A stretch of 64,000 bases of DNA from Glycera tridactyla. Lineage: Eukaryota. Position 1 is the stretch's first letter. Each line of letters opens with the position of its first letter. A program made the translations under genes and the position numbers. The notes under the pieces are model-generated. The model worked only from the letters and a program-made list of their open reading frames with translations, was not told the origin of the DNA and searched no databases. Positions 1 to 64,000 of this stretch are shown here, piece by piece. The stretch is taken from positions 24,552,001 through 24,616,000 of the forward strand of contig OZ286459.1 of assembly GCA_965644265.1 (NCBI GenBank), written 5' to 3'.

Positions 1-859
1 ATTGTGGGTTTTCAGCAAGTCGCATAATCATGTATATCGTCACTGGCGAGGTGAGAGACACCCCGGTTCTTAACTGAGCAGCGCTGTTCACAACAGTGAA
101 CAGGGTTCTTCTTTGGATCGGTGACCAACATGGACAAGGTTCACCATTTTCTACCACTACTCACTGAGGAGGCACTTCTGTGCGGAGTTGACTGAGTGGA
201 ACCTCTATACTCCACCACTTCACTCTACCCAGGTGTGAATAGGTGTTGGCATATATGCAGCGATGGTGATGTAGAGTGCTTAGCCCATGCAGTCAATTCT
301 GTGTCAGTGGTTGTATACTTCCTAAAGAGATAAGAAAGGCTCAAGCTTGAACAGGTCTACCAAGGAATATATTTGTAAGGTCGGGTGGAGTTTCTAAGGA
401 TACCAGACTATAAACCACTACATTTACTTGCTCAGATAAGGTAGGCGGAGATCAGTCTGAATTGCCAGCAATCCTCTGATGTAGTTTGCAACGTTGTGTG
501 TTCGGTGTGGGTTGACTTTACGTCTCTAGAAGGCAGAACGTTGTTCCGCATGTTATGTGTTTTTGTTTTCTTCTCACTTGTGTATTCTTTGTATATATGT
601 TCGGTGCTTTATATGTTTGTACTCCTGCAGAGAAAACATGATACTTACATTGTTCCTCTCTGGAGTTTGCAAACAAATTGTCGATATGGAAACGAAATTC
701 TCAATATTGTTTTTGAAAAGTCACCTTTGAAGATATCTGGATCTCAGAATCAGAAAGATCTGAGTGCAATACAAGAAGGCGGTAGATGACACAAATTTGT
801 GATTCCATGGCGATGAAAAAAAGTACAGTATCCTGACGAAACTGATCCCGGACTCACGC

Positions 860-1390
860 AAAACCTGCTGACCCCCGCCAATATGGTGCTGATATCTTTC
901 ACTGGTCACTCCAATTGGTGGATGAGAATTTTGGTTTGAATACACACGCCAATTGATGACAATTTCCACAGTATTTTAAGTACTCATCATACTTGGATCT
1001 CCCTTGATGTCCTGCTCTACTGACAATTTGAATCATGATAGGAGATTCCCACATTAATTTGAAACCATCCTCATCGCAGTTGATGCCTTCTAATTGCCTG
1101 TCAAATACATTCAGTCAAAGGATTCAATGTTCATGGCCACGCACTGCGCCTGTGATTGAAGTCGGGGAGGCTAATAAAAGGGTGTCATCCAAGTTGGATG
1201 GATCGATCTTCGATTAGAAACTACCACTGCCTTCAGCCACCCCCGGAGTAAGAATCAGTCCACCCAGAGACAACTAAGAGTTGACAATTGCCGACTGATG
1301 CGGTTTTATGTCGATTTTCTTGTAATTGCTGCCTACAGCTTCCAGATGAGTTACGATAGTGTTTGCTCAATGTCCTGTGTACATGTGCTC
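860..1390 (+). pseudogene. Highly degraded Gypsy-like integrase core fragment (also in copy B, ~17640-18250 minus, and copy C, ~54720-55210 plus)
   Basis: Manual translation across stops and frameshifts in the copies gives PANPLPI..., WILGSPL..., ETILIAVDAF..., TTTAFSHPRS..., LVIAAYS, in the order expected for PLxPLP..DILGPL..YILVxVDxFS..TTxYHPQxNG..LxAYR. Confidence 0.35.
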
Positions 1391-2317
1391 CTTCATACAT
1401 GGATGTAGTCAATGGTCATATGTGGTGTGTGTATGCGTGTATGTGTATGTGTACATGTGCTCCCTCATACATGCATGTAGTCGATGGTTATATGTGGTGT
1501 GTGTGTGTGTGTGTGCGTGTATGTGTGTGTGTGTACATGTGCTCCTTCATACATGCATGTAGTCAATGGTTATATGTGGTGTGTGTGTGCCTGTATGTGT
1601 GTGTGTACATGTGCTCCTTCATACATGCATGTAGTCAATGGTTATATGTGGTGTGCGTGTGTGTGTATGTGTGTGTGTGTACATGTGCTCCTCCATACAT
1701 GCATGTAGTCAATGATTATATGTGGTGTGTGTGTGTGCGTGTGTGTGTATGTGTACATGTGCTCCCTCATACATGCATGTAGTCGATGGTTATATGTGGT
1801 GTGTGTGTGTGTGCGTGTATGTGTGTGTGTACATGTGCTCCTCTATACATGCATGTAGTCAATGGTTATATGTGGTGTGTGTGTGTGTGTGTGCGTGTAT
1901 GTGTGTGTACATGTGCTCCTCCATACATGCATGTAGTCAATGGTTATATGTGGTGTGTGTGTGCGTGTATGTGTGTGTACATGTGCTCTTCCATACATGC
2001 ATGTAGTCAATGGTTATATGTGGTGTGTGTGTGCATGTATGTGTGTGTGTGCATGTGCTCCTTCATACATGCATGTCGGTAATGGTTAGATATCTGGTGT
2101 GTGTCTGTGTGCGTGTATGTGTGTGTGTACATGTGCTCCTCCATACATGCATGTAGTCAATGGTTATATATGGTGTGTGTGTGCGTGTATGTGTGTGTGT
2201 ACATGTGCTCCTTCATACATGCATGTAGTCAATGGTTATATGTGGTGTGTGTGTGTGCGTGTATGTGTGTGTGTACATGTGCTCCTCCATACATGCATGT
2301 AGTCAATGGTTATATGT

Positions 2318-2354
<37 letters not shown>

Positions 2355-2430
2355 ATGTGCTCCTCCATACATGCATGTAGTCAATGGTTATATGTGGTGT
2401 GTGTGTGCGTGTGTGTGTGTGTGTGTGTAT
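1375..2430. repeat. Minisatellite, 14 units of ~70-80 bp (conserved ~45-bp core plus variable GT tract)
   Basis: Core tacatgtgctcc(t/c)tcatacatgcatgtagtcaatggttatatgtgg recurs at ~1380, 1452, 1533, 1607, 1680, 1754, 1829, 1908, 1978, 2051, 2128, 2199, 2275 and 2352. Confidence 0.95.
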
Positions 2431-4829
2431 GTGTGTGTCGTGAGAGAGATATCCATGCTCGTATGTGAGTGTGTATTTGTGTGTCATTAGAGAGTGATAT
2501 GCATGTTTGCATGTGCGTGTGAGTGTGTGTGTTGTAAAAGAATGATACACAGGTTTGTGTATGTGTGTCTGTGTTTGTGTATGTGTAAGTATATACATAC
2601 GTACATGCATGCATGCGTGTGTATATGTGTGCCCATGGGTATCTGACATGTTTGATAGACCCTCTCTCTTTCCATCCAAACACCAATGAAATGAATACAT
2701 TGTGTATGCATATGTATATACGTTCATCATTCTGTGTGCATGCGTGTGTGTGAGTATATAAATACGTACATACATGCATGTGTACATGTGTGTGCATGGG
2801 TATGTTTGATAGACGCTCTCCCTCTCAATATCGACACTAATGAGATGGACAGAGTTTGTATGCATGTGTATGCGCGCGTGTGCATGCGTGCGCATAAGCT
2901 TGTGTTACAGGCTATGAAAACCGTGTTCATTGGTCCAGATGAGGCACCTCGAGATGAGACTACAAGGGCTTCTGTAGATGAAAAAGCCTTGAGGGCTAGG
3001 AGTGGTGTTTTATTTCATGGCAAGCGACATGTCCCGCTCTCTCTTTTTCTTTGAAAAAAAAGTTCCTATCTGCCATTCGATGGAATGGTTTCAGGTTACT
3101 GCTTCAGATGAGATTGAAACTGTCACCGATTCAGGCCTTGTGTGGCGTTGAAGGTGTACTAACGCCATTCTGCTTACTTCCATCTGTGTGGTTCATAACA
3201 TCTATCACATCAATGTGCCAGTCACAGATTGATTGATTGATGGGATGATTTATTGATTGATTGATTGTTTGATTGATTGATCAATTGATATTCAACGGCA
3301 CGTATCAACATGAGGGATCATGTTCGCCGTATGTTCCTGATCAATGAAAGCTGAATGTCCATTCTTCAGCAGGCATCACTTACGCAAACCATCAACACAA
3401 GAAGAAAGTTGCATCAATGAAGCTACATTGGAATTTGGGGGAGGAGGAAATGCTCATTTTGAGACCTTCTGGGTTGTTTGAGGGTCTCATGAGCACAGAT
3501 TTGGCTATATTGAGACGTCCATGCAATAGATGTGGATTATTCAACAGTATGCATTCTCCGGGACCTCGATGAAGGATGAAATGATATAATAAAACAGAAT
3601 GAGTGTTCAGAGGATGGAAATAGTACATCAGAGCATCGGTCCACCCACAGCAAAATGTGATTGATCATGTTTGATTCAAAGTAGCTAACAAGAGGAATCA
3701 CATCGTCCAACACACTTTGATACGGCACTTCAGAGGACAGGATCAATGTGAATGTAACGAAGAACAGGCTCAAACGCCTCAAGCACTTCACAACGAGTAT
3801 GCTACTCAGCTCGGATCAAACAGATTCGACCCAGGCAACCTTTTCTGGACATGATTATTTTTCACATTTCAATTGACAGTATACACCTTATGTGCTAACC
3901 TCATTCAGGGATAGGCTCTCTCTCTCTCTGCCTCTCTCTCTGCCTCTCTCCCTCTCTCTATCTATCTAACTATCTATCTCTCTCCATCTCTCTGTAACTC
4001 TCTCTCTGTGACTCCCTCCCTCTCATCTGCACTCAATGATTTCGGTTTGCTCAGGTTGGCTAGAGAAGACTCAGTCTACAACAGTGGATGATACGAGGGG
4101 GAGATGACCATGTGTGGTGAGCATGCCAAAAATATGCAGACAATGTAACGGTTGTGTATGTCGCATCAAACACAACACTGTCATACTGGTGCATATGAAC
4201 AGCATGGATTGGTCGTACTACAGCACCAAGTGAGAGATATAGGCAATCATGTAATTTATATGAGAAGCAAACAGTATGGAATATTTGCTTTTTTATCACT
4301 CAATGTTTTGGTGGCTTTTTTACCCATATATTTATCTGACAGTTCATTCATGCATCGATGCAAGTATTCTGGAAATTAATCATTATTCCACATATTCCCA
4401 ATCATAGAGTGTTTTTTTGTTGTTGTACGTCCAGTTGGCTATGATAGACGGGTTATGGTTTCAGGAATGCAACAATCAAGGTCATGTAAATATGAAACCA
4501 CCGTGTGGAGCAACTTCCATCACATGCGACCCGGGCAATCATGTTTGTAATCAACGCCCAGTGCTACCTGAGAAACCACATTCATCACCAGGCCTGACAT
4601 CGAGTGGAGCCACATAGGTGACTATAATCAAATGCAACCCGAGGGACAACATTGGATCCGAAATGTCATGATTGGGGTCAATTGCGACTGCAGGAACCAC
4701 CTTGTGACCATACCTGAGTGCGAGGAATTTCCCATTTAGCGAAGGGTGCAATCCCATGAAACATGTTCCCAACCAACATCAAAAGTTACTTCGCGAGCGT
4801 CTCTCTTTCTCTCCATACACAAAGATGCA

Positions 4830-4838
4830 CCTACACAC

Positions 4839-4893
<55 letters not shown>
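4830..4893. repeat. (CA)n microsatellite, one of many. Others include a CT tract at 3918-4025, CA at 9649-9680, 14826-14871 and 14970-15013, (ACC)n at 32660-32712 and GT at 58333-58369.
   Basis: Direct reading. Confidence 0.95.
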
Positions 4894-4895
<2 letters not shown>

Positions 4896-6641
4896 AACAC
4901 ACTGATGAAACTGTTCAGGTGCTTGACGACGGCGCTATATGGTACAATGAAACAGGCACTGGCCAAGTTGGCCAGACTGATGGAGTGGAACTCCAGTGTG
5001 CCTTTGTCATCTAACTGATACATAGCCTAGGAGATAACCCCTGATGTACACTAATCTACTTCATGTCTGACCATTAGGCTTTCAGTAGTTGCAAGCCATA
5101 GAGTCACTGGTAATCAACACTGATTGCTTGTTGTTGCAAGCTGTGTTGCCGAGATGAATCATCCTGCCCCACCAGATAATGGCCGATAAAATCCAGCCAT
5201 ACACTTGGTGAATTATCGCCGGCTGTCCTTCTTGTAACATGTGTGGTACACCGTTGGCATACAAAGGCATACATATTTTATGTCACAACCGGTCACGCCA
5301 TAGAAATGTCCCCTATACGCCTATTACTTTTGAGGAAAAAAGGACATGCACTTAGCTCTGGTATTGTGTGTATGTGTGCGCATATATGTGTGTGTGTGCG
5401 TGGGTGTGGATGTGTACACGCATGTGTGTATGTGTGTGCATTGTCGTCGTCAAGGTCCATATCTAGTATTTACTGGAAAGCTAGCAGTTTTCAGATCCAC
5501 CTGGACACTGTGAAATTGACGCATAATTTGTCCATTGGTTGGTCTGTTGTTTGCCCTCAGACTTTACTTCACCTCTGTGTCAGACCATACCAATTTTTTG
5601 TCATTGGCAGGAGGTGAAAATATATGGAATGATCCCGTCATTGCGAGCCTGAGAGTTGTTTCACTCTATTGCATTTGGTCAACCCATTGTCAGGATGAAC
5701 AGAAGTTATACAACCTGTTAGTAGTTCCCACCATCTTGTTATATTGTGAATTACAGTTGTCCAATACGATAATCCCTATATACCCGTGCTCCACGTCTGT
5801 TGTACCTGTTTTAATACACGAGTGGTTTCGGTATTGTTTTCCTAATATAATGAAATCCCCCCTCTCTAACAAGGAAACGTTTCGCTGTACAGGAGCAAAA
5901 TTCAATTAGTCAATGTATTTCCATCATACGGTATTGAATGGCGCTCCGAATTTGATTTTGCAGAATGCGTATTATAGGGCACTTGCTATGCCTAATCCAC
6001 TATATATGATGGATCTGTTCTCAAGCTAAAGCATATTCTCCCCAATATCAACTGACTTTTGAACCCGACAGACATTATCTAATCTCTACGTTCCTTGAAT
6101 CTGCTGAGCTTTATAGAGCCACCAGGGTTTAGTGAATGGCCACACATTTGGTGGGTAATGAACCTCGATAACACAAGCCGGAGGTATAGGCGTCACAATT
6201 TAATCTCCTTCCAGCTATAAGAGAGTTAAATCCTTATGCTTCTGCGGAGAGATCCCTCCTTGTGGGTCTCTGACAAAACTTACTGTAGTTTGACGTTTTG
6301 TTGGAGACCAAGATCACAATCATGATTTTGGCATACCCCACACATACTCTTCACCAGAATCTCAAGGACGGCAACTACTAGGACGGCTTCAAAGAACATG
6401 ACAGCATATTTATTCATGCAGACTTTGCAATTTTTCTATGATAGTCATTCCAAATTTTTGTCATTCTCATTTTCAAATTTGGCAATGATGATGATTGCAC
6501 ATTACTTCCCACTTTTTATGAAGATTCACTCGTGGCGCAATATGAGCCAATAGGTATATTTCTCACGAGAATGACGCGATATTCGCTAAGCCACAGAGAC
6601 AAAGTCCAATACAATGTTTCCACTCATCAGATAAGAGGAAA

Positions 6642-7142
6642 CTATCCAGAAGAACAGTGACATATCTGACTAGATCAGAGTATCACTTATAGTTCCTCCC
6701 AGATCCTCAAAATGATGATGGCAAGACATGGATAGTGCTCATTACGTTACGAATTCTCAAAGAACAACATATGGCCACACCTACGGCCTTCGAACCCCAT
6801 CCATTCAAAACATTGGGTAGAGATTGAGTGAAACCACTTGATCATATCTCACTCGGTAAATCCTCCAGGGCTCAACTGTGTGAATTTGAGAGGGCTATTG
6901 ATTGATCGATGACCCTATTCGAAAAAGTCGTTTGAATCGGTAAACAGCAACAAAAACAAGATGATTAGTAAATCAAATTGCTCCAATGCCCAATCAATGA
7001 GAATTTGCATTGCCATCAACGTCTAATCTATTCGTAACGTGATGAGCACTATCCACGTCTTGCCATCATCCTTTTGAGGATCTGGGAGGAACTATAATTG
7101 ATACTCTGATCTATTCAAATATGTCACTGTTCTTCCGGATAG
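6642..7142. repeat. Short inverted repeat: ~112-bp arms (6642-6754 / 7030-7142) around a ~275-bp loop, at the A/B palindrome centre
   Basis: ctatccagaagaacagtgacatat...atagtgctcattacgttacgaat pairs with attcgtaacgtgatgagcactat...atatgtcactgttcttccggatag. Confidence 0.9.
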
Positions 7143-7151
7143 ACCAGAGTA

Positions 7152-7471
7152 AAGTATTACAATGTAGAAAATATCACACAACTTTTCATGAATGTCAATC
7201 CGATAGACATATTTGATTATTTGCATGAATTGGGAATACTTGGACAAATATGAATCGTATGCATGCTAACCCAGTGCATGCTGACTGGGATATCAGAAGC
7301 CAACCGTGTATATAGAAGCCTTTTTCTGTACGCACGTTTAAGATCCACTGCTGCCTTTCACAAAGAGTAGGGGCGGCTACCGACGGTAGTACCTCTTTTC
7401 TTCAGCATTTTCAATTTTTCAGTCCGATATAACCAAAAGTGGTTGGAAGGACGTAAGCCCCAAACAAACAA
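7152..7471 (+). mobile_element. 3' fragment of an I/Nimb-type (RNase H-bearing) LINE with a CAAA tail
   Basis: 7152-7253 translates KYYNVENITQLFMNVNPIDIFDYLHELGILGQI*, resembling the C-terminus of I/Nimb ORF2. It ends ggttggaaggacgtaagccccaaacaaacaa. Diverged homologues of the 3' part lie at ~33040-33235 (+) and ~49780-49960 (-). Confidence 0.55.
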
Positions 7472-7533
7472 GCGAACAAACAAAATCTCCTTGATATAGT
7501 CTCCTCTTATCTGATGAGTAGGAACATTACATA

Positions 7534-7785
7534 GTCCGTGGGCCAATTCTCAGAAGAGGCTTGAAAACCACTTCTCGTAGGACCGGAAGGGAAGTTAGGT
7601 TTCTTTGCTTTATTTCATAGATTGGAGTATAGCAAACACATTTAGACAGGGGTACCTCTCCAAAAAGTGTCCAGAGGTTGATTCTGGACTAAAATTCAAA
7701 ATGGCTGTCATAAGCGAATTCATGAGAAACCTAATTCCCCTTCCGGTCCTACCGAATCTGGATTTTCATGAATTGGCCCGCGGAA
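7534..7785. mobile_element. ~250-bp MITE with TA flanks (Tc1/mariner-like target)
   Basis: TIR gtccgtgggccaattc / gaattggcccgcggaa (14/16). Internal IR gtaggaccggaagggaagttaggtttct (7577-7604) / agaaacctaattccccttccggtcctac (7725-7752). Absent from the paralogous sites in copies A (~6600) and C (~60415). Confidence 0.6.
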
Positions 7786-8334
7786 TAATATTAGGCCCAG
7801 AGGTAGTGACTCAGCAAATTCATCGGAATGTATCTAGGCACACTTGTGAGAAATATACCTATCGACTGATATTCGAGGATGAAAAAGTGAAAGTGAAGTC
7901 CAATCATAATCATTGGCAAATTTTAAAATGAGAATGACAAGAATTTGAAATACCTATAATAGAAACGAATTGCAAAGGTTGCATGAATGAGGATGATGCT
8001 ATCTCTCCTCGAAGCCGTCCTAGCAGTTGCTGTCCTCAAGATTTCTTTTACACGTGTATGTGTTCGGTATGCCAAAATCATGATTCCAATCTTGGTTTCT
8101 AACAAATGTTAAATCACAGTTAGTTGTATCTTTATCTCTTTCCCTCTCCCTCCCCCTGTCTCTTCTTTTCTCCCTCCCACTCCCTTTTTCTGTCTCTTCC
8201 TCGATCTCTCTCTCGTCTAACTCTTTATTCCCCTTTCCTTTCACCTCTCCTTGTTCCCATTCTCATTCCATCAATTTGGGCTGTGTTTCCAGAAATGCAG
8301 TCATAATACCATTCGTGACTCATCACCAAAAAAA

Positions 8335-8417
8335 TCCTCCTAGGTAGGTAGTCTGATTCAGCCTACTCAAGTGCAGAAAGTGGACCTAAAGCCTTAACAT
8401 TTCTTTTCATTTCATTT
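8335..8417 (+). mobile_element. 5'-truncated copy of the SINE family seen at 59831-60000
   Basis: gcctactcaagtgcagaaagtggacctaaa is shared with the full SINE. Flanked by TSD-like tcacca(a/g)aaaa (8323, 8418). The site is empty in copy C (~59590). Confidence 0.75.
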
Positions 8418-8530
8418 TCACCAGAAAAGAGCTGACCCCATCACTCGCAAAAGTAGGCTCATCTGGTTGAGTTGACGGTATTTTCTTCCCATAGTACCAA
8501 GTAATCCAAGGAATATGCACAGTAGTTAGG

Positions 8531-9100
8531 ATGCTTCGAATAATGCACGTGCTGCTTGGGGTAAATTACCCACCAAATGTGAGGCCTTCACTGATTCCTG
8601 GTGAATATATCAAGCTCCGTAGATTCGATGAACGTAGAGATAAGGTACACATCATAATATTTCTGTTAGAAAAAAAGTGGAAACTCGAGAACATGTTATC
8701 ATGTAATCACTCTCGAATTGTAATCAAACGAAATCAAGATGATGAAATGGAATTCTCATGAAATTTTGAAACAGTACTGGGATATATAGTGGATGAGGCA
8801 ACAGTATAGCAAGGACTGTTTAACAGGAACTCTGCAAATCTAATTTGGAACGCCATTCAATATCGAGAAGAGAAAGTTGATTAACTAATTGAATTTTGCT
8901 CTCGCACAGAGAATAGTTCTCTCGTAGTTGATGAAGGAGTTCAACAAGAAAAACAATACACACAGACAATGATGTTGCCAACACTTCTCATGGCTGATTT
9001 ACAGACTCTTACGTTCTATTCAGCTGTCAATAACGACCCCATTGTCTTTCTAGGACTGACAATTCTTGAAATTCCGTAGAGTAACACCTCTGCAGATATT
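8531..9100 (+). pseudogene. Possible decayed Penelope-like RT C-terminal/GIY-YIG fragment (copies at ~59000-59552 minus and ~6000-6170 minus)
   Basis: YPPNVRPSLIPGEYIKLRRF (B) and HYPPNVRGSLIPCEYMKLSRF (C) resemble the Penelope HPxxxKxSIPxxExLRLRR motif. DVAxHF- and KESLIF-like remnants lie downstream. Confidence 0.35.
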
Positions 9101-9645
9101 GGTCAGTCATCGCTGGTTGCTTGTGGTTCTCCTATTTATTCATAAATACTCGATATATCAGGATGTAATCTCTATGAACCAAACCACTCATATAATAAAA
9201 CAGCTACAATGGAGGTGGAGCACAGGTATATAGGGATCATCGTATTCGACTAAGGTAATTCACTAAATCACAATATTATGTGGGATAACGAGATGGCGGG
9301 AATGGATAACTGGTTGTATAAGTTCAGTCCATTCTGCCAATTGGCGGACCAGATGAGATAAAGGGAAACAACTCACAGGCCTGTAATGACGGAATCAACA
9401 TGAGTGATTCAATATATTTTCACATTCTGTCAGGGGCAAAAAATTTTGACAGTCTGACACAGCAGTGAAGTAAACCTAGGACCAAACAACTGACCAACCA
9501 TGGACGGATCTCGTGTGATATGTCTTTGAATCACAATAGAGCTAAACAGACCAGATCAATTCACAATCGATGTAGACATTTCACAGTGCCTGGAGTGCAT
9601 TTTGAAACTGCTAACCTTCAAATCACTACCAGACATGGAACTTGA

Positions 9646-9687
<42 letters not shown>

Positions 9688-10982: not shown

Positions 10983-11118
10983 NNNNNNNNNNNNNNNNNN
11001 NNNNNNNNNNNNNNNNNNNNNNNNNNNNNNNNNNNNNNNNNNNNNNNNNNNNNNNNNNNNNNNNNNNNNNNNNNNNNNNNNNNNNNNNNNNNNNNNNNNN
11101 NNNNNNNNNNNNNNNNNN
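10983..11118. other. N block, one of six: also 24612-24743, 25674-25806, 29928-30082, 30367-30508 and 52468-52597
   Basis: Direct reading. Where a paralog is readable the site is a simple repeat (e.g. the CT tract at ~56995-57100 and the CCTA tract at ~52845-52950). Confidence 0.95.
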
Positions 11119-12704: not shown

Positions 12705-12747
<43 letters not shown>

Positions 12748-49300: not shown

Positions 49301-49401
49301 TTCCCCTACGTCTGCTCCTGCCCCTTTTCCTAGGTCTTCAGTGGAAGGTAAAATGTATGGAAATTGTGAAAATTCATGGTGTCATTTCAGACAATCTCAT
49401 A

Positions 49402-49705
49402 TATCTGATCACAGAAGCACTTGCGATCCCTGCCACTGTTAAGGAGACAGGACAACCCATTGATGTTGATGGCAGCGCTAGCCATGTCTGGACGGTATTG
49501 ATTTCCAATAACTGCATCGATCCACGGAAGAGGGACAACCCCCGGCATACAAAACATGAAAAGTCTGGCGAAAGATCGGACCTCCCGCTCACATATCTGG
49601 TCGAAACATCCAAGTCTATCTTGTTCTTTCTTGTCATTGTCATCCTATGCATGATATAAGCTATAGTGGAGCATCATGGCCACTGTATTGATGGGGGAAT
49701 TATCC
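49402..49705 (-). mobile_element. ~0.3-kb segment present only in the right arm; possible L1/Tx1-like RT fragment
   Basis: Absent at the paralogous left-arm site (~33310). The minus strand reads CFDQICER..PWIDAV..ININGLS..SGRDR, loosely like AFDRVxW..WI..NGxxS..RGxRQG. Confidence 0.35.
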
Positions 49706-52700: not shown

Positions 52701-55700
52701 TCCCTCCCTCACTTTCTTTCTCCCTCTCTCCTTCCCTCTCCCTCCCTGCCCAAGCACCCACCCACATAACTATTAAACCACACACCCAACCGAACCCTAC
52801 TGCTCACCGAAACCAACCCATCCACACAACCACCCACCCACCAATCCATCCACTTACCTATCCACCTACCTACCTATCTACCTACCTACCTACCTACCTA
52901 CCTACCTACATATCTACTCACATACCTACCTACCTATCTACTCACCTAAAAAGCTACCTACTGGTGAACAAGCAATCTTATCCGACCAGCACTAGGGAGA
53001 ATTTTTTGGACCTGGTACACCTAATAATGTGATGTATCAAGACATACATACACAATAAGAGACATATCGGATGTTAAATATTATCCAGATGGTTTGCAGC
53101 AATCAGTAGCCTAATATATCTCTCTGTAACTGAGCCACACCATTGTCATACATATTCACCATTGTATCTGACCCGCCATTCGGTGACCTCCATCATGCAG
53201 CGATGAGTCCAGTGTTCAATCTAGAAATTGACTTCAGAATGGGAAATGCTCCCCTCTCTGATGAAGGGAACATTTTCATAGAAATAAGGGGCGTTCTTAG
53301 AGGGAAATAGAATAGACAATGTCATTCATCCATCAATAGGGCTTTCTGATGTGGCATAATGCCCCCCTCCACCCAGAAACAAGGAGCGTCTTGTCAGGTC
53401 TGTGGGGCCACCCCCCTCTGCATTGCACACCACGAATCTCATAGAATCCCGAATCATAACAGGTCACATGGGGAAGAAATACATCTGGCTTGTCCATCTC
53501 GCGGCATGCCGCTCAAGAAAGCGGGCCATATGGACTCTAAAGTCCATGTATGATGGTCAAGGCGCTAACGTATTGAGCAGGGGCACTGATTGCAATATCA
53601 TATATAGTCGCACTGAGTGAATCAATAGATGGAGCTACTATGCATGTGCCCTCCAGCTTTATCTCTCTGTCTAGGCCTTATGCAGTATTCAGGATGACTG
53701 ATTAGATTATTGGAGTCAGGAAGCTCCGATCATCTTGATTATACATATCTGACTTATCTGCAGTGACTGTCAGTATGGTGGCGGGAACTAGGAAATGATG
53801 ATACGAAATTTCGTGTCCATACTGAGATATTACACTGTCTTCATTGAGAGCAGCGCATTGTTTTTCTGGAATTTTGTCGAATTTTCATGTACAGTAACTG
53901 GCGAGGTGAGTGCGGATTCTCCGGTTCTCAACTGAACAGCCCTGTTTTCAACAGTGAGCAGGGCTCCTCCTCGGATCACCATTTCATACTGGACCTGCAA
54001 CATCACACAGATCTGTAATATCTGCACTACTCACTGAGGAGGCACTTCTGTGTGAAGGTAACTGGATGGAACCTCTGTACTCCACCACATCACTTCACCC
54101 AGGTGTGAATGGGTATTTGGCATATATGCAGTGATGGTGATGAAGAGTACTTAGCCCTTGCAGTCAATTCTGTGTCAGTGGTTGTATACTTCCCAGGGAG
54201 TTAAGAAAGGCTCATGCTTGAACAGGCCTGCCAGGGAATGTATTTGTAAGGTCGGGTGAACTTCTCAAAGATACCAGACTCTGAACCACTGCATTCACAT
54301 TTACTTTCCAGAGTCTGCTCAGAATAAGTATATGGAGATTGATCTGAATTGCCAGCAAACATCACATGTAGTTCGCAACATGTAGTCCATAGTAGGCAGA
54401 ATATTTGCGATATGCCTGTTCTGGTTACTATGCTCATTTCTTTTCTTCTGACTTGTGTATTCTTTGTATATATTTTAGTGCTTTATATGATTGTACTCAT
54501 GTGGGAAAAATATAATCATTCAGATGTTCCTCTCTGGAGTGTTTGACAAAAAATATTCAAACTCAAACTCATATGTAGATATGGAAACTGGATTTTCAAT
54601 ATTGCTTTTCAAAGGTCATCTCTGAAGATATCTGGATCTCAAAATCAGGAAGGTCTGAGTGCAATAGCTAAAGGGGGTACACAACACAGTTTCGTGATTC
54701 CATGGCAATGACAAAAGTTGCAGTATCCAGGCAAAACTGATCCCGGACTCACGCCATACCTGCTAACCCCCTGCCTATATGATCCTGATATCTTTCATTG
54801 GTCACTCCAATTGGTGGATCAGAATTTTGGATACTTGGATCTCCCTTGATGTCCTGCTCTACTGACAATTTGAATCATGAGTGAAGATTCCCAAATTTAC
54901 ACGAAACCATCCTCATCACAGTTGATGCCTTCCAATCGCCTGTCAAATATATTCAGCCAATGGATTCAATGTTCATGGTCCCGCACTGCGCCTGTGGTTG
55001 AAGTCGGGGAGGCTCAAGTTTGATGGATCGATCTTCGATAAGACACTACCACTGCCCTCAGCCGCCCCCAGAGTTGGAATCAATTCACCCAGAGACAACT
55101 ATGAGTTGACTATTGCCGACTAATGTGGTTTTATGTCAATTTTCTTGTAATGGCTGCCTACAGCTTTCAGATGAGTTACAAGAGTGTTTGCTCAATGTCC
55201 TGTGTACATGTGCTCCTTCATACATGCATGTAGTCAATGGTTATATGTGTTATGTGTATGTGTGCGTGTGTTTGTGTGTGAGTGTGCGCATAATTCCTTG
55301 CGAGATACAACCTCAGAAGCAGCTGCCAAAAAATTACGCCATCTAGCGGCGGCAGACATAAACGCTACGGCAAGCAGAAAGTGCATTAACAGCTAGAGGC
55401 CTGTGTGTTATGAGAGATATCCATGCTCATATGGAAGCGTGTGTTTGTGTGTCATTAGAGAGTGATATGCGTGTTTGCATGTGTGTGTGAGTGTGTGTGT
55501 GTCGTGAAAGAGTGATACGCAGGTAGGTATGTGTGTGTGTCTGTGTTTGTGTATGTGTAAGTATATACATACGCACACGCATGCATGCGTGTGTATGTGT
55601 GTGCTCATCTGACATGTTTGATAGACCCTCCCCCTTTCCATCCGAACACCAATGAAATGAATACATTGTGTATGCACATGTATAGGCATTTATCATTGTG

Positions 55701-55810
55701 TGTGCATGCGTGTATGAGTATATGAATACCCACATACATGCATTTGTCCATGTGTGTGCATGGGTATGTTTGATAGACGCTCTCCCTCTCGATATTGACA
55801 CTACTGAAAT

Positions 55811-56134
55811 GGACAGAGTTTGTATGCACATGTATACGTGCGTGTACATGCGTGAGTTTCAAGAGGCGAAGAAAACTGTGTTCACTGCTCCAGATGAGGC
55901 ACCTCGAGATGAGAATACAAGGGCTTCTGTAGATGAGAAACCCTGAAGGCTAGGAGCGGTGTTTTATTTCACGGACAGAGTTTGTATGCACGTGTATACG
56001 TGCTTGTACATGCGTGAGTTTCAAGAGGCGAAGAAAACTGTGTTCACTGCTCCAGATAAGGCACCTCGAGATGAGAATACAAGGGCTTCTGTAGATGAGA
56101 AACCCTGAGGGCTAGGAGCGGTGTTTTATTTCAC
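55811..56134. repeat. Tandem duplication of 162 bp, specific to copy C
   Basis: ggacagagtttgtatgcac...ttttatttcacgg at 55811 and 55973; single copy in A and B. Confidence 0.9.
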
Positions 56135-58328
56135 GGCAAGCAATGTGCCCCGCTTTCTCTATTATTCGGAAAAAAACGTTCCTCTCAGCTAGTCGATGGC
56201 ATGGTTCAAGGTGACTGCTTCAGACGAGATTGGAAATGTCACCCATTCAGGCCTTGTGTGACGTTGAAAGCGTACTAACACTATTCTGCGCACTTTCACC
56301 TGTGTGGTTCACCACATCTTTCACATCAATGTGCTAGTCACAGATTGATTGATTGATTGATGGAATGATTGAAGGATCATGTATGCCGTGTGTCCCTTAT
56401 CAATGAAAGCTGAATGTCCAGTCTCCTGCAGGCATTACTTAAACAAACCCTCAACAAGATGAAAGGCTGTCAAAAGTTGCATCAATGATGTGACATTGGA
56501 AATCTTTATTTTGGGAAGATGCTCATCTCGAGACCCTCTGGGTCGTTTGAGGGTCTCATGAGCACAGATTGGGCTATATTGAGACGTCAATGCGATAGAT
56601 GTGGATTTTTTAACAGTATGCATTCTCCGGGCCCTCAATGGAGAGAGAAATGATATAATGAAACAGAATCAGTGTTCATAGGATTGAAATTGTACACCGG
56701 AGCATCGGTCAACCCACAGCGAAATGCGATTGATCCTGTTTGATTCAAAGTAGCTGACAAGAGGAGAGAACTCTGACATGCCAATCACATCATCTCACAC
56801 ACTTTGATTTGGCACTTCAGAGGATTGGATCAATTCGAATGTAACAAAGAACAGGCTCAAACGCCGCAAGCACTTCACTACGAGTATGCTTCTCAGCTTG
56901 GATCAAACAGATTCCGCCCAGTCTACCTTTTCCGAAGTTGACTTCTTTCACAATTCAATTGACAGTATACACATCCTGTGATAACCTCTTTCAGGATTGC
57001 CTGTCTGTCTGTCTCTGTCCCTGTCTCTCTCCCTCTGTCTGTGTCTGTCTGTCTGTCTCTCTCCCTCTCGCTCTCCCCCTCTCTCTCTTTTCCTCTCTCC
57101 GTCGGGCATGCCCAATATCAGGAGTTCTCAGGGTATGTAGACAATGCAACGTTTGCGTATATTCAACACAATACTGTCAAATTGGTGCATCTATACAAGT
57201 ATGCATTGGGTGTACTGCAGCACCAAAACTCAACGTTTTGGTGGCTTTATCACCCAAAGATTAATCTGACAGTTCATCCATGCATCGATGCAATATTCCG
57301 CAATTGTTGTTTCCACATATTCACAATCATAAAGTGTTATCTTCTCAATTGAAAGTCCAGTTGGCCGAGAAAGGCAAGATACGGTCGCAGAAATGTAACA
57401 ATCAAGGCTATGTTAGCTTGAAACCGTGTGGGATGACTTCCATGCGACCTGGAAAATCATTTTTGTCATCATCGCTCAGTGCAACCCGGGAAACCACATC
57501 CATCACCAGAGTTTCAAGTGATCAAGTGGAGCCACATAGGCAACCCTAATTGAGAGCAACCTGAGAAACAATGTTGAATCCGAAATGTAATGACAATCAT
57601 CAATTGCAACCTCAAGAATCACGTTTGAGACCGTACCTGAGTGCGGGGAATTTCCTAGTTAGGGTCGAGTGCAATCCCAGGAAACATGTTCACTACCAAC
57701 ATCAAATGCTACCTTATGAGTTAGGTCTTGCCTAGACAGCTTGACGAATGTGCTACAATTACTGCCCCAACCTTCTCTCTCTACACACACACAGACACAC
57801 ACAGACGCACATGCGCATGCGCGCACACACACACACTGATGACCCCGTTCAGGCACTTGACGACGGCGCTATCCGGTACAATGAGGCAGGCACTTGCCAA
57901 GTTAGCCAGACTAATAGAGCAGAACACTAGTGTGCCTTTGTTATCTAACTAATACATAATCCAGGAGAAAACCCCTGATGTACACTAATCTACTTCATGT
58001 CCGATGATCAAGCCATGAGTAGATGCAACAATTAGCGTCACTGGTGACCAACACAGATTGCTTACTGTCGCAGTCTATGTTGCTGGAGTAAATCATCCTG
58101 CCCCACTAGATAATGGCTAATAAAATCCAGCCATGGACTTGATGAAAGACCGACGTCTGTTCTTCTTGATGCTTGCGTGTTACGTTGTTAGCATGCAAAG
58201 GCATACATCTTTTATGATGTGTCACAACCAGTTACACCATAAAAATGTTTCCGAAACACCTATTACTTTCAAGGAACACAGAATATGCACTTGGCTCTGG
58301 TGTATGTGTGCGCTTATATGTGCGCGTG

Positions 58329-58373
<45 letters not shown>

Positions 58374-59830
58374 TCAAGTTCCATGTCTGGTAGTGATTTG
58401 AAGGTTAGCAGTTTCAAAATGCACACCAGGCACTGTGAAATGTCTACATCGATTGTGAGTTGATCTGGTCTGTTGAGCTCTATTGTGATTCAAAGACATC
58501 TCACACGAGATCCGTCCATGGTTGGTCAGTTGTTTGGTCCTAGGTTTACTTCACTGCTGTGTCAGACTGTCACAAGTTTTTGCCCCTTACAGAATGTGAA
58601 AATATATTGAATCACTCATGTTGATTCGGTCATTACAGGCCTGTGAGTTGTTTCCAATTATCTCATCTGGTCAGCTAATTGTCAGGATGAACCGAACTTA
58701 TACATCCAGTCATCCATTCCCGCCATCTCGTTATCCCACATGATATTGTGATTTAGTGAATTACCTTAGTCGAATACGATGATCCCTATATACCTGCGCT
58801 CCACCTCCATTGTAGCTGTTTCAGTACATGAGTGGTTTGGTTCATAGAGGATACATCCTAATATATCGAAATATTGATGAATAATAAGTAGAACCCCAAC
58901 CACCAGCAATCAGCGCATATCTGCGAAGGCGCTGCTCTACGAATAATTAAGAATTGTTGGTCATAGAAAGACAATCAGGTCGTTATTGATACCTAAATAT
59001 ATCATGCTCCCTACCCTCACTCACACACACACCTTCGCTTAATCAAGTTGATGAAGATGAGGCTTTCTTTGGTTCCGTTTCCAACAATGTGTCGATAGAA
59101 CGCAATAGTCTGTGAATCAGCCATGAGAAGTGTTGGCAACATCATTGTCTGCATTCATTGTATTTCTTGTTGAACTCCTCCATCAATTACGTAGAAACAA
59201 TTCTCTGTGCGAGAGCAAAATTCAATTAGTTGATTGATCTACACCACTCGATATCGAATGGCGCTCAGAATTAGATTTTTCAGAGCTCATGTTATACGAC
59301 ATTTGAGAGTGATTACATGATAACCTGCTCTCAAGATCTCCACTTCCTTTCTAACAGCAATGTCATAATGTGTACCTTATCCCTACGTTCCTTGAATCTG
59401 CTGAGCTTCATATATTCACAAGGAATTAGTGAGCCCCTCACATTTGGTGGGTAATGGAGCCGAGTAGCATGAGCATCATTCGATGATTCCTGACTACTGT
59501 GCATATGCATTGGAATAGTTGTTACTAGGGGGGAACAATACCAATAAATCAACCAAATGAGCTCAATTTTGTGAGTAATGTGGCCAGCTCTTTTCTGGTG
59601 ATGAATTACGAAGTGTTAGGAAGCACGGCCCACATGAATGGAACGAGAACGAGAACAAGAGGAGTGAGAGGAAAGGGGAGGGAAAGGGGAAACCGAATGA
59701 GAGAGGGAGAGGGAAACCGAATGAGAGAGGGAGAGAGGGAGAAGAGAGAGAGATAAGAGAGGAAGAGAAATGGGAAGAGACAGAAAAAGAGAATGGACGA
59801 AAAGAAGAGACAGGTGAAGGGAGAAGGAAA

Positions 59831-60000
59831 AAAAATGTTGAGGTTTTAGGTCCACTTTCTGCACTTGAGTAGGCTAAATCAGACCACCTGCCAAGGAGGA
59901 GCGGAGATGATGGGTGAAACATCCCTGCATGGTAGGACCGGGGATTGAACCCCAGACCCATTACACGCCGGCCCAGCACGCTACCACTGAGCCACCAATG
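59831..60000 (-). mobile_element. Full-length tRNA-derived SINE (~170 bp)
   Basis: Minus strand has A box TGGCTCAGTGG and B box GGTTCAATCCC. Perfect 15-bp TSD gaagggagaaggaaa (59816-59830, 60001-60015). Confidence 0.9.
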
Positions 60001-60599
60001 GAAGGGAGAAGGAAAGAGAAGCCCAACGTAATAGGCGTCACGATCCAGTTTTCTTCCAGCTATTTAAGAGCTGAAACTTGATGCCCTGCGAGGAGATCTC
60101 TTCTACTGAGTCCCTGAACGAAATAGCTGTAGTTCCAAGTTTTGTTGAGGTCAGCAACTGCTAGGACGGCTTCGAAGAAAGATAATATCATCTTTATTCA
60201 TGCAAACTTTGCAGTTTCTCTATCATAGTCATTTAAATTTTTTGTCATTCTCATTTTCAAACTTGGCGATGATGATGATCAAACTTGAAGTATTCACATC
60301 ACTTTCCACTTTTTATTGGGATTCATTTATGGCGCAATATGAGCCAATAGGTAAATTCCTCACGAGGATAACAAGATACATTTCGGGGAATTTGCTGAGT
60401 TGCTACCTCTGAGACCAATATGATATGTCTACCCATCAGATAAGAGGGCACTATCCAGAAGAACAGTGACAATATTTGAAGGGCCTTGTCTTTTGCTCAC
60501 CGGCGCAAATTCACTCACTTTACTGGCTCAATTTGCTAAATTTCAATTATGAATAAAATTGTATTGACACATTAGTTTCTAGTTACGACAAAATTTATT

Positions 60600-63500
60600 C
60601 CCCATCGATGAGAAATTCATGACAGTGCTCAGAAGGTGACAATTTCACAAAGTACAGAATCAATGATGATGGCACGAGAGAATTTGAAAGCGAATTGTCC
60701 CGAAATGAGGGTCTTGAATCCTTTCAAATCCCGATTTTAGTTGAAATTTAAACGACAATCACGGAAACCACCAAAATGATACTGTATGAATAGGTCATAA
60801 ATGGGGACGTTACTGCATTACACTTTCATATTGTATGGACATTTATAAGCTGCCTATGTATTCCAGCAATGATTGTAGCAGAGTGCTCTTGTATGCATAG
60901 TTGCTAGGCCAACATGCCAGTAATCCACGAAGTGTAAACAATAGAGCAGGCATAGGTGATTTTTTTGGTTGCTGTTGTGCTGCAATCATCCCACAACGTT
61001 GGCCCAGTTGTGACACATTCGGAATTCATTATCTGGTGAAATCCACCGAGGAAAATTCATTTAAGAGTATTGAGTGTGGATGCCTGTTTTCACCGTACTT
61101 AGTTAGTTGGTACTGATTTAACGTCATGTCAGCTTCATTTGTGCTATATCGTATCGCCTATGGAATAGACATGGGTGGGATCATCCATGACTGATTCTTC
61201 ATGACCCATCGTTTTCAAGAAAAGGAGAAAATTCATGAAATCCAGCTTTCGGCTCCATAAGAGAATCCATCATCCGATTAATTCTACTTACGCGGCTGCA
61301 GGCGTGTGATTCAATATGCCTAGAAACTAGAACATCCTCACTACTTCCCTCCCACGTGTGACTGTGCACTTAGATGTGTGCATTTTTTTTATATGTGCTC
61401 CTGTGTTGCTGTCCATGTTGGCAGGTGCAATACTCAATATTCACATCAGTTTGGTTCATCCGTAGCTGAGAACTATCCTATTTGTCAGAGCGTCATGGTG
61501 ATGAATGACATGCGCTAGATGTGCTAAAACACGAGCCGTAGGCAAAGATTTTTTGACTAATTTTGTGAGCCATCTCCCTTTGAGCACTAGGCTTTCAAAT
61601 CAGACCTTAGTATTCGACAATCATCCTCTTGACAAACAGTCAAAGGCGTCATATAAGACATACGACGGTAGAATGTATAGGGAAATCGGTCAGGAATGTT
61701 GATGTGAAGCAGTGTGAAGGTGCGGTCCAGCTACATCATTGAAACAAACTCATCAGAGAAGGCAGACCACAACCAGAGAAAGCCGAGAAGCACTTGATGC
61801 TGCCCTCGCACATGAACAGTCTGCACAGGAATTGTAATTCACCTCAGACCGGCTTAAAATTCATTTCCCACTCTTTCTGCCTCATTATTCAAAAATACTA
61901 CCACAGTTTTCAGAAGCTTTGCAACAGGATTAGACAAGTGATGATGCATATCGACCCCAATTTGTCACAGATGGAGGTATCGAACATTCATTCATCATGG
62001 TCTGGCATGGAGTGACACAGAACTGGCAAAATGACACATACCACACAAGTGTGTGACGCAGTTTGACTAGAATGGCATATGTTTTTTGTTGATTCGTTAT
62101 CACCACCATCCAATCCCCAATCCCGCCACAGAGAGCCACAGAGAGCTAACAGTGAGTGTAAAATGTGGGGGATTTTCCCCTGTAAACCGGAGCTCTGCTG
62201 TTGCTCATACACCAACCGGATCTCACATGTGAAACAGTTGCCACTCTGCCACAGACTGACAGAAGGTAATCACCCATAACGCCGCCGACCACGTAAGTAT
62301 AAACGTAGCGTGAATCATAAGTTGACTACAGGTGCGTGCATAGGTATCAAAATCCGCGGGAATCACGAGAGTTCAGACATAACTAATCAACTGAATCTGT
62401 ACTGACTGTTTTTGTCTCATGGGCAACATATGGTGTATATTGAGACATACATGCAATAGACATGGTTGAGATCATCTGATTCCCACCTCTGGGTCTCTAT
62501 CCTGATGTGGAATATCATGCAATCAAAATGTACGCTACAATGGGCATCGTTGAGATCACGCACGATTCGCCCTCTCAAATTACCGCACCCAGAGACGGCA
62601 TGTAGGATATGACCTACTTTGAGGATTGCAATTTGAGCTGGTTCACGCTTTTTAGATGGGACCCTGTTCGGCTGATCTCACAGGAATATCTACTTCATTA
62701 CACAGAGCATTCAAATGTCGCTACCAATCAAGCTTGCTCAGGAGGAGTCGCATGGTTACAGTGTAGCCATTACCCGACAGTGATCTACGAATACGAATGC
62801 CTACATTGACTTTTGAGTCTCGCTCTACGGCCATTACAAAAATCTACTACCGGTAATGACACCCTGACTGTCTGTGAATTGTAGAAAGTATCACCATACG
62901 TTTGGGACCCAGCAGAGGAAGTCTTGAATGATTCCCCATGCCCTTTGCATGGGCGTTACAATATAGCTCATACGGCGCTGACATGACATTGAACCAGAAT
63001 CAACCAACTATTTTATGGGGCATGACCACCAGTCAATATACATTCAAACCTCTCGATGAAGGCTGCCTTCGGCTGCATCAAAAGGTGGCCTTCATAGGGA
63101 GGTGGTTTTATTGGGAGGTCATTAACTGTTGAATATGCTACCATGATCGTAGCTCAGGGTGGTCTTTATAGGGAGGCGGTCTTTATAGAGAGGTGGTCTT
63201 TAGAGGGGGTTCGACTGTATTTCTACCACATACACTCATTCTTGTCCACAGAGATCTCACCTCCGGTCATGTGCAGAGTGGTCTTTCTATACAGGTGATC
63301 TTTGAAAAGAGAAGAATACCGTTGACACCATTTGTTCAAGGTGGTCTCTGTGGTCAGTTGGTGTATGTGTGCAGGAGACCTAGATCAGATTTAACCAATC
63401 CCATCACGTTGCTAGGATTGTGTCAACAGATTACGTAGTGTGAGTGACAGCCAATACCCAAGGTCAACAATATTCGACTCAACATCAGCCTGTAACCAAG

Positions 63501-64000
63501 CAACGTCAGTCTGGTATTGTAACGATTCCATGATGGTGATGGTATGTAAGCAGGACCTACTCCAAGTAGACTGGCATTCGTGAGCAAACATCTGCTCACG
63601 ACCTCCTAGAGACAATATCATTACCATGAACATGGCTTTGAGGTTTCCTCCATTCATTGAATATTGTGTATTCCAAATAGAATATTGCCCACGCTAATAT
63701 GATGTTTTGTAGAGCCAATAAGTAGCTCTTACCCCACATGGAGGATATTCAAGGAATATCTCTTTAAGCACCGAAAGTCAAAAACGTCATCATGTTCATT
63801 TGACGTAGTCCATTATATATACGTCCGATAAGGGCTCACCTCTCTCGGAAAACTGCCTTCACGCTGGTTTTGCCGAACCTGTAAAGAATAGGCGACTACC
63901 ATTTGGCGGAGTCTCACTGCAAGATGGTTGCATACTTGTCGATAGTGAAAACAATGCTTTTTAGCAGTCTGTCGTTGCAAGATTTTGCACCATGGATAGA
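60600..64000 (+). repeat. Copy D: diverged (~75-80%) paralog of 34430-38976 and of the reverse complement of 43290-48280; runs off the window
   Basis: Collinear anchors: tcaatgagaaattca (34439) ~ tcgatgagaaattca (60605); ggaattcattatctggtgaaa (34860, 61021); gtgacagccaataccc (38951, ~63444). It continues into sequence present only in the right arm. Confidence 0.88.
63041..63217. mobile_element. 177-bp pogo/Tc1-like MITE with TA TSD, specific to copy D
   Basis: TA-cattcaaacctctc ... gagggggttcgactg-TA; internal ggtggtctttatag repeats. The site is empty at ~38720 and ~43975. Confidence 0.8.

What the first reader, a model, noticed from the sequence alone, without database searches (positions are those of the whole stretch)
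1..64000. Window-scale array of alternately inverted segmental duplications, including a palindrome with ~18-19-kb arms
Almost all non-TE sequence belongs to four paralogous copies arranged A(+), B(-), spacer, C(+), then D in the same orientation as B. B and C form a palindrome centred near 40636; A and B form a second one centred near 7000. Head-to-head and tail-to-tail amplification of this kind is the known product of breakage-fusion-bridge cycles or foldback/ODIRA-type replication. A repeatedly re-palindromised, apparently gene-free locus that lasted long enough to gain arm-specific TEs is unusual. The mechanism is inference.
Basis: partly seen in the sequence, partly recalled or inferred. 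Interest (0 to 1): 0.8.

Follow-up and report, generated by a model that had tools for sequence, protein, structure and literature searches.

The report
Old, layered inverted duplication cluster
The window is a real but old and decaying, gene-free cluster of local duplications in alternating orientation, including an 18-kb-arm palindrome whose centre still shows it arose by a DNA strand folding back on itself; it is a well-preserved example of a known process, not a new one.

Summary
Of the window, 72% lies in collinear paralogous blocks and 24% in arm-specific transposons. Orientation runs A(+) B(-) C(+) D(-), with a further direct copy E beyond the window; the cluster spans about 96 kb of a 2.04-Gb animal genome that I do not take for human. 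B (8418-40238) and C (41034-59601) are inverted and collinear. C is 18.6 kb; B is 31.8 kb because of a 9.4-kb LINE, a roughly 5-kb element and smaller insertions.

Copies D and E keep the ancestral order. They show that the 795-bp "spacer" is arm sequence around a loop of at most 149 nt, later blurred by 526-bp and 106-bp deletions. That is a fold-back junction.

The copies differ in age: B-C K2P is 0.035 inner and 0.08 outer, against 0.17-0.30 for A versus B or C and for B/C versus D/E. Divergence is mosaic, also between the direct copies D and E, which points to patchy gene conversion. A single ODIRA or breakage-fusion-bridge event and an assembly artefact are all disfavoured.

All six N runs sit between collinear flanks. 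No gene was found.

This is a new member of a known kind, of moderate-to-low interest. Other notes from this scan report short-spacer inverted duplications elsewhere in this genome.

The parts
1..6754 (+). Copy A. It starts 4.9 kb upstream of the window and is collinear with C 49029-60479. It carries a private 72-74-bp satellite expansion at 1376-2433.
   Evidence: 74-86% identity to C, in the same orientation. K2P to B or C is 0.17-0.28; tandem array.
6755..7029 (.). Loop of the A-B palindrome. It holds a ~230-bp 'core' (6769-6994) and is flanked by the 113-nt inverted repeat L/L' (6642-6754 and 7030-7142, 94%).
   Evidence: the core recurs at 34138-34373 (+) and 48344-48595 (-); part of the core belongs to an old dispersed repeat family; no special fold (z = -0.14).
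7030..9130 (-). Oldest, distal part of B (L', x', y'), interrupted by a high-copy element at about 7139-7785. In this stretch B is no closer to C than to A.
   Evidence: in segment x, K2P is A-B 0.30, B-C 0.41, C-E 0.10; the partner switch lies at B ~9130 / C ~58880; the first 40 bp from 7139 match many loci at 95-98%.
9131..40238 (-). Main B arm, the inverted partner of C 41034-58880.
   Evidence: collinear, K2P 0.035 (inner) to 0.08 (outer); (B,C) clade supported 100/100.
12750..17870 (.). B-specific insertion. About 4.75 kb of it is a dispersed repeat, 83-88% identical to many copies on other contigs.
   Evidence: absent from C.
20106..29543 (-). B-specific, full-length young LINE. It has endonuclease (23570-24304) and reverse transcriptase (21453-23093) domains, two long upstream ORFs (26648-29160) and an internal tandem repeat of about 1.07-1.10 kb that holds two N runs. 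A 5-bp target duplication, CCTAT, flanks it.
   Evidence: Pfam RVT_1 at 2.6e-35 and Exo_endo_phos at 9.4e-10; dozens of copies at 96-98% identity; the empty site is intact in C.
33988..34573 (.). Small inverted repeat R'-core-R inside B, with arms of 100-150 nt at 87%. Its mirror copy in C lies at 48157-48716. The B-C divergence step falls a few hundred bp outside this structure.
   Evidence: change point at B 33641 / C 49077, 2dLL = 140.
40239..41033 (.). B-C centre.
- 40239-40367: continuation of the B arm (segment s3, matching D 68297-68426 in + orientation), reached after a 526-bp deletion.
- 40368-40464: short inverted repeat plus loop.
- 40465-40495: remnant left by a 106-bp deletion.
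- 40496-41033: continuation of the C arm (reverse complement of D 67775-68313).
   Evidence: alignments to D and E; an inverted repeat at the loop ends this good has P about 0.005 by chance.
41034..58880 (+). C arm. The stretch 42296-43726 is also present in D and E, so it was deleted from B.
58881..60508 (+). Native continuation of C into D (segments y and x). From here on, C's closest relative is E rather than B.
   Evidence: C-E 0.10 against B-C 0.22-0.41.
60509..64000 (-). Start of copy D, which runs to about 72590 beyond the window. It has the orientation of B and is inverted relative to C 40496-48520, with a 12-kb spacer. It lacks 538 bp (L plus core) that E retains.
   Evidence: K2P to B or C is 0.27-0.32. 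D-E K2P is 0.015-0.30, mosaic.
10983..11118 (.). N run. The other five are 24612-24743, 25674-25806, 29928-30082, 30367-30508 and 52468-52597. Lengths are 130-155. The flanks are collinear with partner copies, and four of the six runs fall at homologous positions of repeated sequence.
   Evidence: These are the only N runs in the 264 kb examined.

Best explanation
A locus-specific ancestral stretch of about 24 kb was copied locally several times, at clearly different times. Its order is still readable in C-right plus D, and in E.

The events:
- At least three copying events made inverted junctions: A|B at 6755-7029; B|C at about 40.4 kb; and the small R'-core-R structure that joins the inverted C-left to the rest.
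- At least one event made a direct tandem copy (D to E).

Each inverted junction has a short single-copy loop of roughly 150-380 nt. This is the footprint of a fold-back: a DNA end or nascent strand pairs with itself or with the opposite strand a short way back and copies the sequence it has just left. For B|C this is shown at base level: a loop of at most 149 nt, 2 bp of flush microhomology and an imperfect 7/8-nt inverted repeat at the loop ends.

Afterwards the copies decayed as neutral DNA:
- deletions beside the centre (526 and 106 bp);
- a 1.4-kb deletion in B;
- a LINE and other transposons inserted into B only;
- a satellite expansion in A only.

Patchy gene conversion kept some stretches more alike, both between inverted arms and between direct copies.

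Shown: the structure, the relative ages, the junction anatomy, the transposon insertions and the absence of recognisable genes. Inferred: the molecular route (replication template switch versus hairpin-primed break repair), the exact order of the oldest events, and that conversion rather than re-synthesis made the mosaic.
For: Structure.

Locus-specific sequence: outside small dispersed repeats, every segment matches only contig 1 at 24.55-24.64 Mb.

Ages (K2P):
- B-C: 0.034 (inner), 0.075-0.091 (outer).
- A to B or C: 0.17-0.28.
- B/C to D/E: 0.27-0.32.
- D-E: 0.134.

Trees: (B,C) and (D,E) both supported 100/100, with A outside.

B-C junction, reconstructed with D and E as the ancestral order. 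An inverted repeat at the loop ends this good occurs by chance with P about 0.005 in 30,000 random loops from the window.

Post-duplication changes:
- LINE with a 5-bp target duplication and an intact empty site in C, 96-98% identical to dozens of copies.
- An older element present in B only.

Mosaic divergence: a sharp step (2dLL = 140) plus low-divergence patches in the outer arm; a partner switch at C ~58880; the same mosaic in the direct pair D-E.

Known mechanisms with these hallmarks: PMC3907307 (single-copy spacer plus 2-8 bp of inverted microhomology) and PMC4689423 (junctions at short interrupted inverted repeats; secondary deletion of one arm beside the junction).
Against: - There are no reads, so physical continuity across the two centres is unverified.
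- Flush microhomology at B|C is only 2 bp. The 7/8-nt inverted repeat lies 3 nt off the exact junction, and in copy D itself the same test scores only P about 0.1.
- The A|B and R'-core-R junctions are too diverged (about 74% to E) for base-level analysis.
- In segment x, A, B and C are roughly equidistant. This would also fit a single old triplication followed by B-C homogenisation.
- The B-C and C-E partner switches coincide within about 100 bp, and I cannot explain that.
Confidence: 0.72

Rival explanations
1. One inverted triplication (ODIRA or tandem-inverted-duplication type) made A(+), B(-) and C(+) together. Later B-C gene conversion made that pair look younger, and a deletion shortened A.
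For: - The + - + order, with C running natively into D.
- Both junctions have short loops.
- In the stretch farthest from the B-C centre, A, B and C are about equally diverged.
- Conversion clearly operates in this cluster.
- The model is described in PMC4689423.
Against: - A covers only 11.6 kb of the roughly 19-kb unit and abuts unrelated sequence.
- The B-C to A-C divergence ratio is a steady 0.44-0.47 across three separate outer segments. This looks like one discrete later event rather than patchy conversion.
- A transposon at about 35907-37270 is shared by B and C but absent from D and E, so time passed between layers.
Confidence: 0.15
2. Breakage-fusion-bridge cycles: repeated sister-chromatid fusion and breakage built the alternating ladder.
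For: [quoted passage not shown]
Against: - The junctions have single-copy loops, not flush fusions. PMC3907307 treats the absence of a spacer as the hallmark of sister-chromatid fusion.
- The locus is interstitial, at 24.5 Mb of a 162.7-Mb contig.
- The layers are separated by long evolutionary times, not by successive cell cycles.
- D-E is a direct repeat.
Confidence: 0.05
3. Assembly artefact: two haplotypes joined head-to-head, or a chimeric fold-back read.
For: No read data could be examined. Earlier notes of this scan place the genome among lophotrochozoans, which from general knowledge can be highly heterozygous. The inner arms differ by only 2.3-4%.
Against: - The outer arms differ by 8-10% and more.
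- The arms differ by a LINE insertion with a target duplication, a roughly 5-kb element and a 1.4-kb deletion.
- The centre carries asymmetric deletions that only make sense against copies D and E.
- There is no N run at either centre.
- A chimeric read would give identical arms.
- No second near-identical copy exists elsewhere in the assembly.
Confidence: 0.04
4. A giant foldback-type or composite transposon with long inverted arms.
For: Inverted arms around short loops. Other notes of this scan report foldback transposons in this genome.
Against: Apart from small embedded repeats, the arm sequences occur nowhere else in 2.04 Gb. There is no transposase, and no protein domain at all outside the LINE.
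Confidence: 0.02

Closest known systems
Fold-back inverted duplications (human constitutional cases, PMC3907307)
   Same: Inverted and non-inverted copies are separated by a short single-copy spacer that marks the fold-back loop, and there is short inverted microhomology at the spacer end.
   Different: The human spacers are 0.77-70 kb and lie beside terminal deletions or translocations in de novo cases. Here the loop is at most 149 nt, the event is interstitial, it is present in the reference assembly, it is old (arms 2-10% diverged), and further events are layered over it.
ODIRA inverted triplications (PMC4689423; applied to human variants in PMC10766186)
   Same: A + - + order with the middle copy inverted; junctions at short, interrupted inverted repeats that pre-exist in the genome; later deletion of one arm beside a junction.
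   Different: The three copies here differ in extent and in age. Whether the unit contains a replication origin is unknown. Two more copies (D, E) do not fit a 2n+1 scheme.
Large sex-chromosome palindromes of mammals (PMC8327919)
   Same: Arms longer than 8 kb around a spacer; arm-to-arm gene conversion; rearrangements and deletions concentrated at the centre of symmetry, particularly where spacers are small.
   Different: Those arms are more than 99% identical and carry selected, testis-expressed gene families. Here arm identity is 82-97.7%, no gene is detectable, conversion is failing to keep pace with divergence, and nothing links the contig to a sex chromosome.
Breakage-fusion-bridge amplicons
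   Same: A ladder of copies in alternating orientation.
   Different: The junctions have loops, the site is interstitial, the layers are far apart in time, and one step is a direct tandem duplication.

Membership tests
Fold-back inverted duplication | Adjacent copies in inverted orientation | tested here: met
   B 8418-40238 against C 59601-41034, collinear.
Fold-back inverted duplication | Short single-copy spacer (loop) between the inverted copies | tested here: met
   measured against D and E, the arms meet at a loop of at most 149 nt. The A|B loop is 275 nt.
Fold-back inverted duplication | [quoted passage not shown] | tested here: inconclusive
   2 bp flush (TG). An imperfect 7/8-nt inverted repeat lies 3 nt from the junction; P is about 0.005 in the C lineage but about 0.1 in copy D.
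ODIRA inverted triplication | Three copies, + - +, of the same extent | tested here: not met
   The orientation condition is met. The extents differ: A is 11.6 kb, against about 19 kb for B and C without insertions.
ODIRA inverted triplication | All three copies of equal age | tested here: not met
   B-C is 0.075-0.13 against 0.17-0.28 for A to B or C in the same segments. Conversion could mimic this, so the rejection is not absolute.
ODIRA inverted triplication | Replication origin inside the amplified unit | not testable with these tools
   No origin data exist for this organism.
Large palindrome in the sex-chromosome sense (PMC8327919) | Arms longer than 8 kb | tested here: met
   the C arm is 18.6 kb.
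Large palindrome in the sex-chromosome sense (PMC8327919) | Arm-to-arm identity above 99% | tested here: not met
   96-97.7% in the inner arm, about 92% in the outer arm.
Breakage-fusion-bridge product | Flush sister-chromatid fusion without a spacer, with loss of distal sequence | tested here: not met
   Loops are present at the junctions, and the site is interstitial. Loss of distal sequence cannot be tested.
Transposable element with long inverted arms | Dispersed copies elsewhere in the genome | tested here: not met
   the unique arm sequence matches only this locus.

The most novel reading that the evidence does not exclude
The locus may be a germ-line fold-back hot spot. Three separate inverted junctions with 150-380-nt loops arose within about 60 kb at widely different times. 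Other notes of this scan also report short-spacer inverted duplications elsewhere in this genome. Together these could mean that strand switching over roughly one Okazaki-fragment length is an unusually frequent mutation class in this lineage. The stepwise B-C divergence might then record renewal of the palindrome from its centre. A transcribed 18-kb inverted repeat could also act as a source of hairpin or small RNA. None of this was testable here.
Probability: 0.15. Interest if true: 0.55.

Novelty: new member of a known kind. Interest (0 to 1): 0.3.

Why it matters
Uninverted paralogues (D and E) survive beside the palindrome. This makes it a rare natural case in which an old germ-line fold-back junction can be read at base level: the loop, the microhomology and the later deletions that stabilised the centre. 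It also shows what becomes of a large palindrome with no gene to preserve it. Conversion becomes patchy, the arms drift to 82-97% identity and collect private transposons. That contrasts usefully with the selected, more-than-99%-identical palindromes of mammalian sex chromosomes. It does not change current understanding of how such structures form.

Tried and rejected
- Rfam scan of the window: no family reached its threshold.
- Pfam on 55 ORFs of at least 90 aa and 93 ORFs of 62-89 aa from the arms: nothing beyond chance. Only the LINE has domains. Short or spliced exons could still be missed.
- Folding the 275-nt A-B loop as single-stranded DNA: no more stable than shuffles (z = -0.14). The core is therefore not an intrinsic hairpin.
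- Is the ~230-bp core a transposon that creates inverted flanks? Twelve dispersed relatives (fetched) share only about 90-300 bp with it, and no inverted repeat brackets them. The differing flanking repeats around the core come from this locus's own duplication history.
- A simple gradient of identity from the centre, as evidence for repeated re-palindromisation: rejected as the sole reading. The outer arm holds low-divergence patches, and the direct pair D-E shows the same mosaic.
- Base-level analysis of the A|B junction against E: abandoned, because similarity is only about 74%.
- Organism identity: not pursued with the costly protein searches. Earlier notes of this scan call the genome annelid or mollusc; I did not verify this.
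- N runs: their letters were not read, filled or inferred.
Full report
**Context.** The window is contig 1, positions 24,552,001-24,616,000, of a 2.04-Gb assembly in 207 contigs. It has 42% G+C and is rich in microsatellites and retroelements. I do not take it for human. I fetched 100 kb on each side and analysed the 264 kb together. Coordinates below zero or above 64000 are window coordinates extended into those flanks.

**N runs, tested first.** The six runs are the only N in the 264 kb, and their lengths are 130-155.
- For 10983-11118 and 29928-30082, both flanks align in one orientation and in order to the partner copy. The partner intervals are 124 and 115 bp.
- Runs 30367-30508 and 52468-52597 are mirror images in the two arms.
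- Runs 24612-24743 and 25674-25806 sit at equivalent positions in two units of a tandem repeat inside a LINE.

I saw no sign of a misjoin. I did not read or infer the hidden letters.

**The observation.** Self-comparison on both strands shows B (8418-40238) and C (59601-41034) inverted and collinear.
- C is 18.6 kb.
- B is 31.8 kb because it carries private insertions at 12733-17872, 19184-19698 and 20106-29543.
- Conversely, C 42296-43726 is also present in D and E, so B has lost it.
- A (-4876 to 6754) is collinear with C 49029-60479 in the same orientation and inverted relative to B. The A-B centre is 6755-7029, between 113-nt repeats of 94% identity.
- D (60509 to about 72590) has B's orientation.
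- E (73075-91182) is a direct copy of D.

Paralogous blocks cover 46.1 kb of the window and arm-specific insertions cover 15.2 kb. Only 2.5 kb is neither.

**Not a transposon, and no gene.** Apart from small embedded repeats, every segment of the unit matches only contig 1 at 24.55-24.64 Mb. No Rfam family was found. No Pfam domain was found in 148 ORFs of at least 62 aa from the arms. The only domains belong to the LINE. In the flanks, ORFs of at least 120 aa gave retroelement domains, a few low-significance matches and one fragment of a cys-loop receptor gene about 76 kb upstream.

**The arm-specific insertions are true later events.**
- 20106-29543 is a full-length LINE, 96-98% identical to dozens of copies. 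It is bounded by a 5-bp duplication, CCTAT, and the empty site is intact in C.
- 12750-17870 holds an older dispersed element (83-88%).

**The B-C centre.** D and E keep the uninverted order of the arm end and what follows it. Aligned to them, the 795-bp 'spacer' resolves as follows:
- 40239-40367: the continuation of the B arm (D 68297-68426, same strand), reached after a 526-bp deletion.
- 40368-40464: a loop (reverse complement of D 68420-68495 and 68553-68573).
- 40465-40495: the remnant of a 106-bp deletion.
- 40496-41033: the continuation of the C arm (reverse complement of D 67775-68313).

So the arms originally met at a loop of at most 149 nt, centred near 40.41 kb. The junction has 2 bp of flush microhomology. 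An imperfect 7/8-nt inverted repeat lies at the loop ends; one this good occurs in about 0.5% of random loops from the window, though the same test on copy D gives about 10%.

This is the anatomy reported for fold-back inverted duplications (PMC3907307) and for junctions at short interrupted inverted repeats (PMC4689423). PMC4689423 also reports secondary deletion of one arm beside the junction. Instability focused on palindrome centres is likewise known from primate X palindromes (PMC8327919).

**The other inverted junctions.** E reads x-L-core-R-d. The A-B centre reads x-L-core-L'-x'. B and C contain R'-core-R, with arms of 100-150 nt. So the same ~230-bp core forms the loop of two different inverted structures. 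The core has no special fold. Its dispersed relatives are not bracketed by inverted repeats. I therefore read the core as a passive loop, not as an agent. These junctions are too diverged for base-level work.

**Ages (K2P).**

| Comparison | Segment | K2P |
|---|---|---|
| B-C | inner 7 kb | 0.034 |
| B-C | next two segments | 0.075, 0.091 |
| B-C | most distal | 0.129 |
| A to B or C | same outer segments | 0.17, 0.19-0.20, 0.27-0.28 |
| B/C to D/E | d | 0.27-0.32 |
| D-E | d | 0.134 |

- The B-C to A-C ratio is a steady 0.44-0.47 across the three outer segments.
- Trees give (B,C) and (D,E) support of 100/100, with A outside.
- A transposon at about 35907-37270 is shared by B and C but missing from D and E.

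The copies therefore arose in several layers. This argues against one ODIRA event or a quick run of breakage-fusion-bridge cycles.

**Mosaic divergence.**
- Along the arms, B-C divergence steps from 0.035 to 0.081 near C 49077 (2dLL = 140).
- The outer arm holds patches at 0.03-0.04 (C 50.0-50.4 kb and 57.8-58.6 kb).
- At C ~58880 (B ~9130) the partner changes sharply. To the left, C is closest to B. To the right, C is closest to E (0.10), and B is 0.22-0.41 from C.
- The direct pair D-E is equally mosaic, at 0.015-0.30.

The simplest reading is patchy gene conversion among all copies, laid over discrete duplication events. Renewal of the palindrome from its centre remains possible but is not required. 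I cannot explain why the B-C and C-E switches coincide within about 100 bp.

**Artefact?** Arms that differ by 2-10% or more, private transposons with target duplications, asymmetric centre deletions, no N at either centre and no extra near-identical copy in the assembly all argue against a chimeric read or a haplotype misjoin. Reads were not available, so this rests on sequence alone.

**Verdict.** This is a real, old, gene-free and decaying cluster of local duplications. Its main palindrome preserves a readable fold-back junction. It is a new member of a known kind and of moderate-to-low interest.

Noticed in passing
window 20106-29543: Young full-length LINE on the minus strand. Two long ORFs (369 and 472 aa, 26648-29160) upstream of the endonuclease and reverse transcriptase have no Pfam match. 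An internal tandem repeat has a period of about 1.07-1.10 kb. Dozens of copies in the genome are 96-98% identical, so the family was recently active.
   Followed up: partly
window 1376-2433: Satellite with a 72-74-bp unit, about 14 copies, 87% matches, GT-rich. It is expanded in copy A only. B and C carry much shorter versions at the homologous place (about 12617-12883 and 55072-55287).
   Followed up: no
window 36677-36850: Element of about 170 bp with thousands of first-look candidates and many copies at 91-95% across the genome (SINE- or MITE-like). It is nested in an older repeat (about 35907-37270) that B and C share and D and E lack.
   Followed up: partly
window 53900-54308, and L011:4485-4893: Two different dispersed repeats of about 410 bp, each with many copies at 79-87%. 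The second lies directly at the ancestral site of the B-C fold-back, so the loop end falls inside it.
   Followed up: no
window coordinates -64500 to -9500 (L004-L010): A separate set of direct tandem duplications with a 12-16-kb period and 75-87% identity. Apart from one ~330-bp inverted match to P at its proximal edge, it is unrelated in sequence to the A-E unit. A further direct pair at +126 to +148 kb is 96-97% identical. The whole neighbourhood is rich in duplications.
   Followed up: no
L003:3095-4414 (-), about 76 kb upstream of the window: A 440-aa open frame with a neurotransmitter-gated ion-channel ligand-binding domain (9.7e-12). It is the only host-gene domain identified in the 200 kb of flanks. 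A minisatellite with a period of about 142 bp beside it resembles one in copy D (66498-66967).
   Followed up: partly
window N runs (six): N runs of unequal length (130-155). Four of the six fall at homologous positions of repeated sequence. This looks more like deliberate masking of particular sequence than like assembly gaps. The letters were not examined.
   Followed up: partly
window ~58880, B ~9130, E ~74760: The closest partner of C switches from B to E within about 100 bp, next to a ~97-bp indel that C and E have and B lacks. Two independent exchange end-points seem to coincide. Unexplained.
   Followed up: partly
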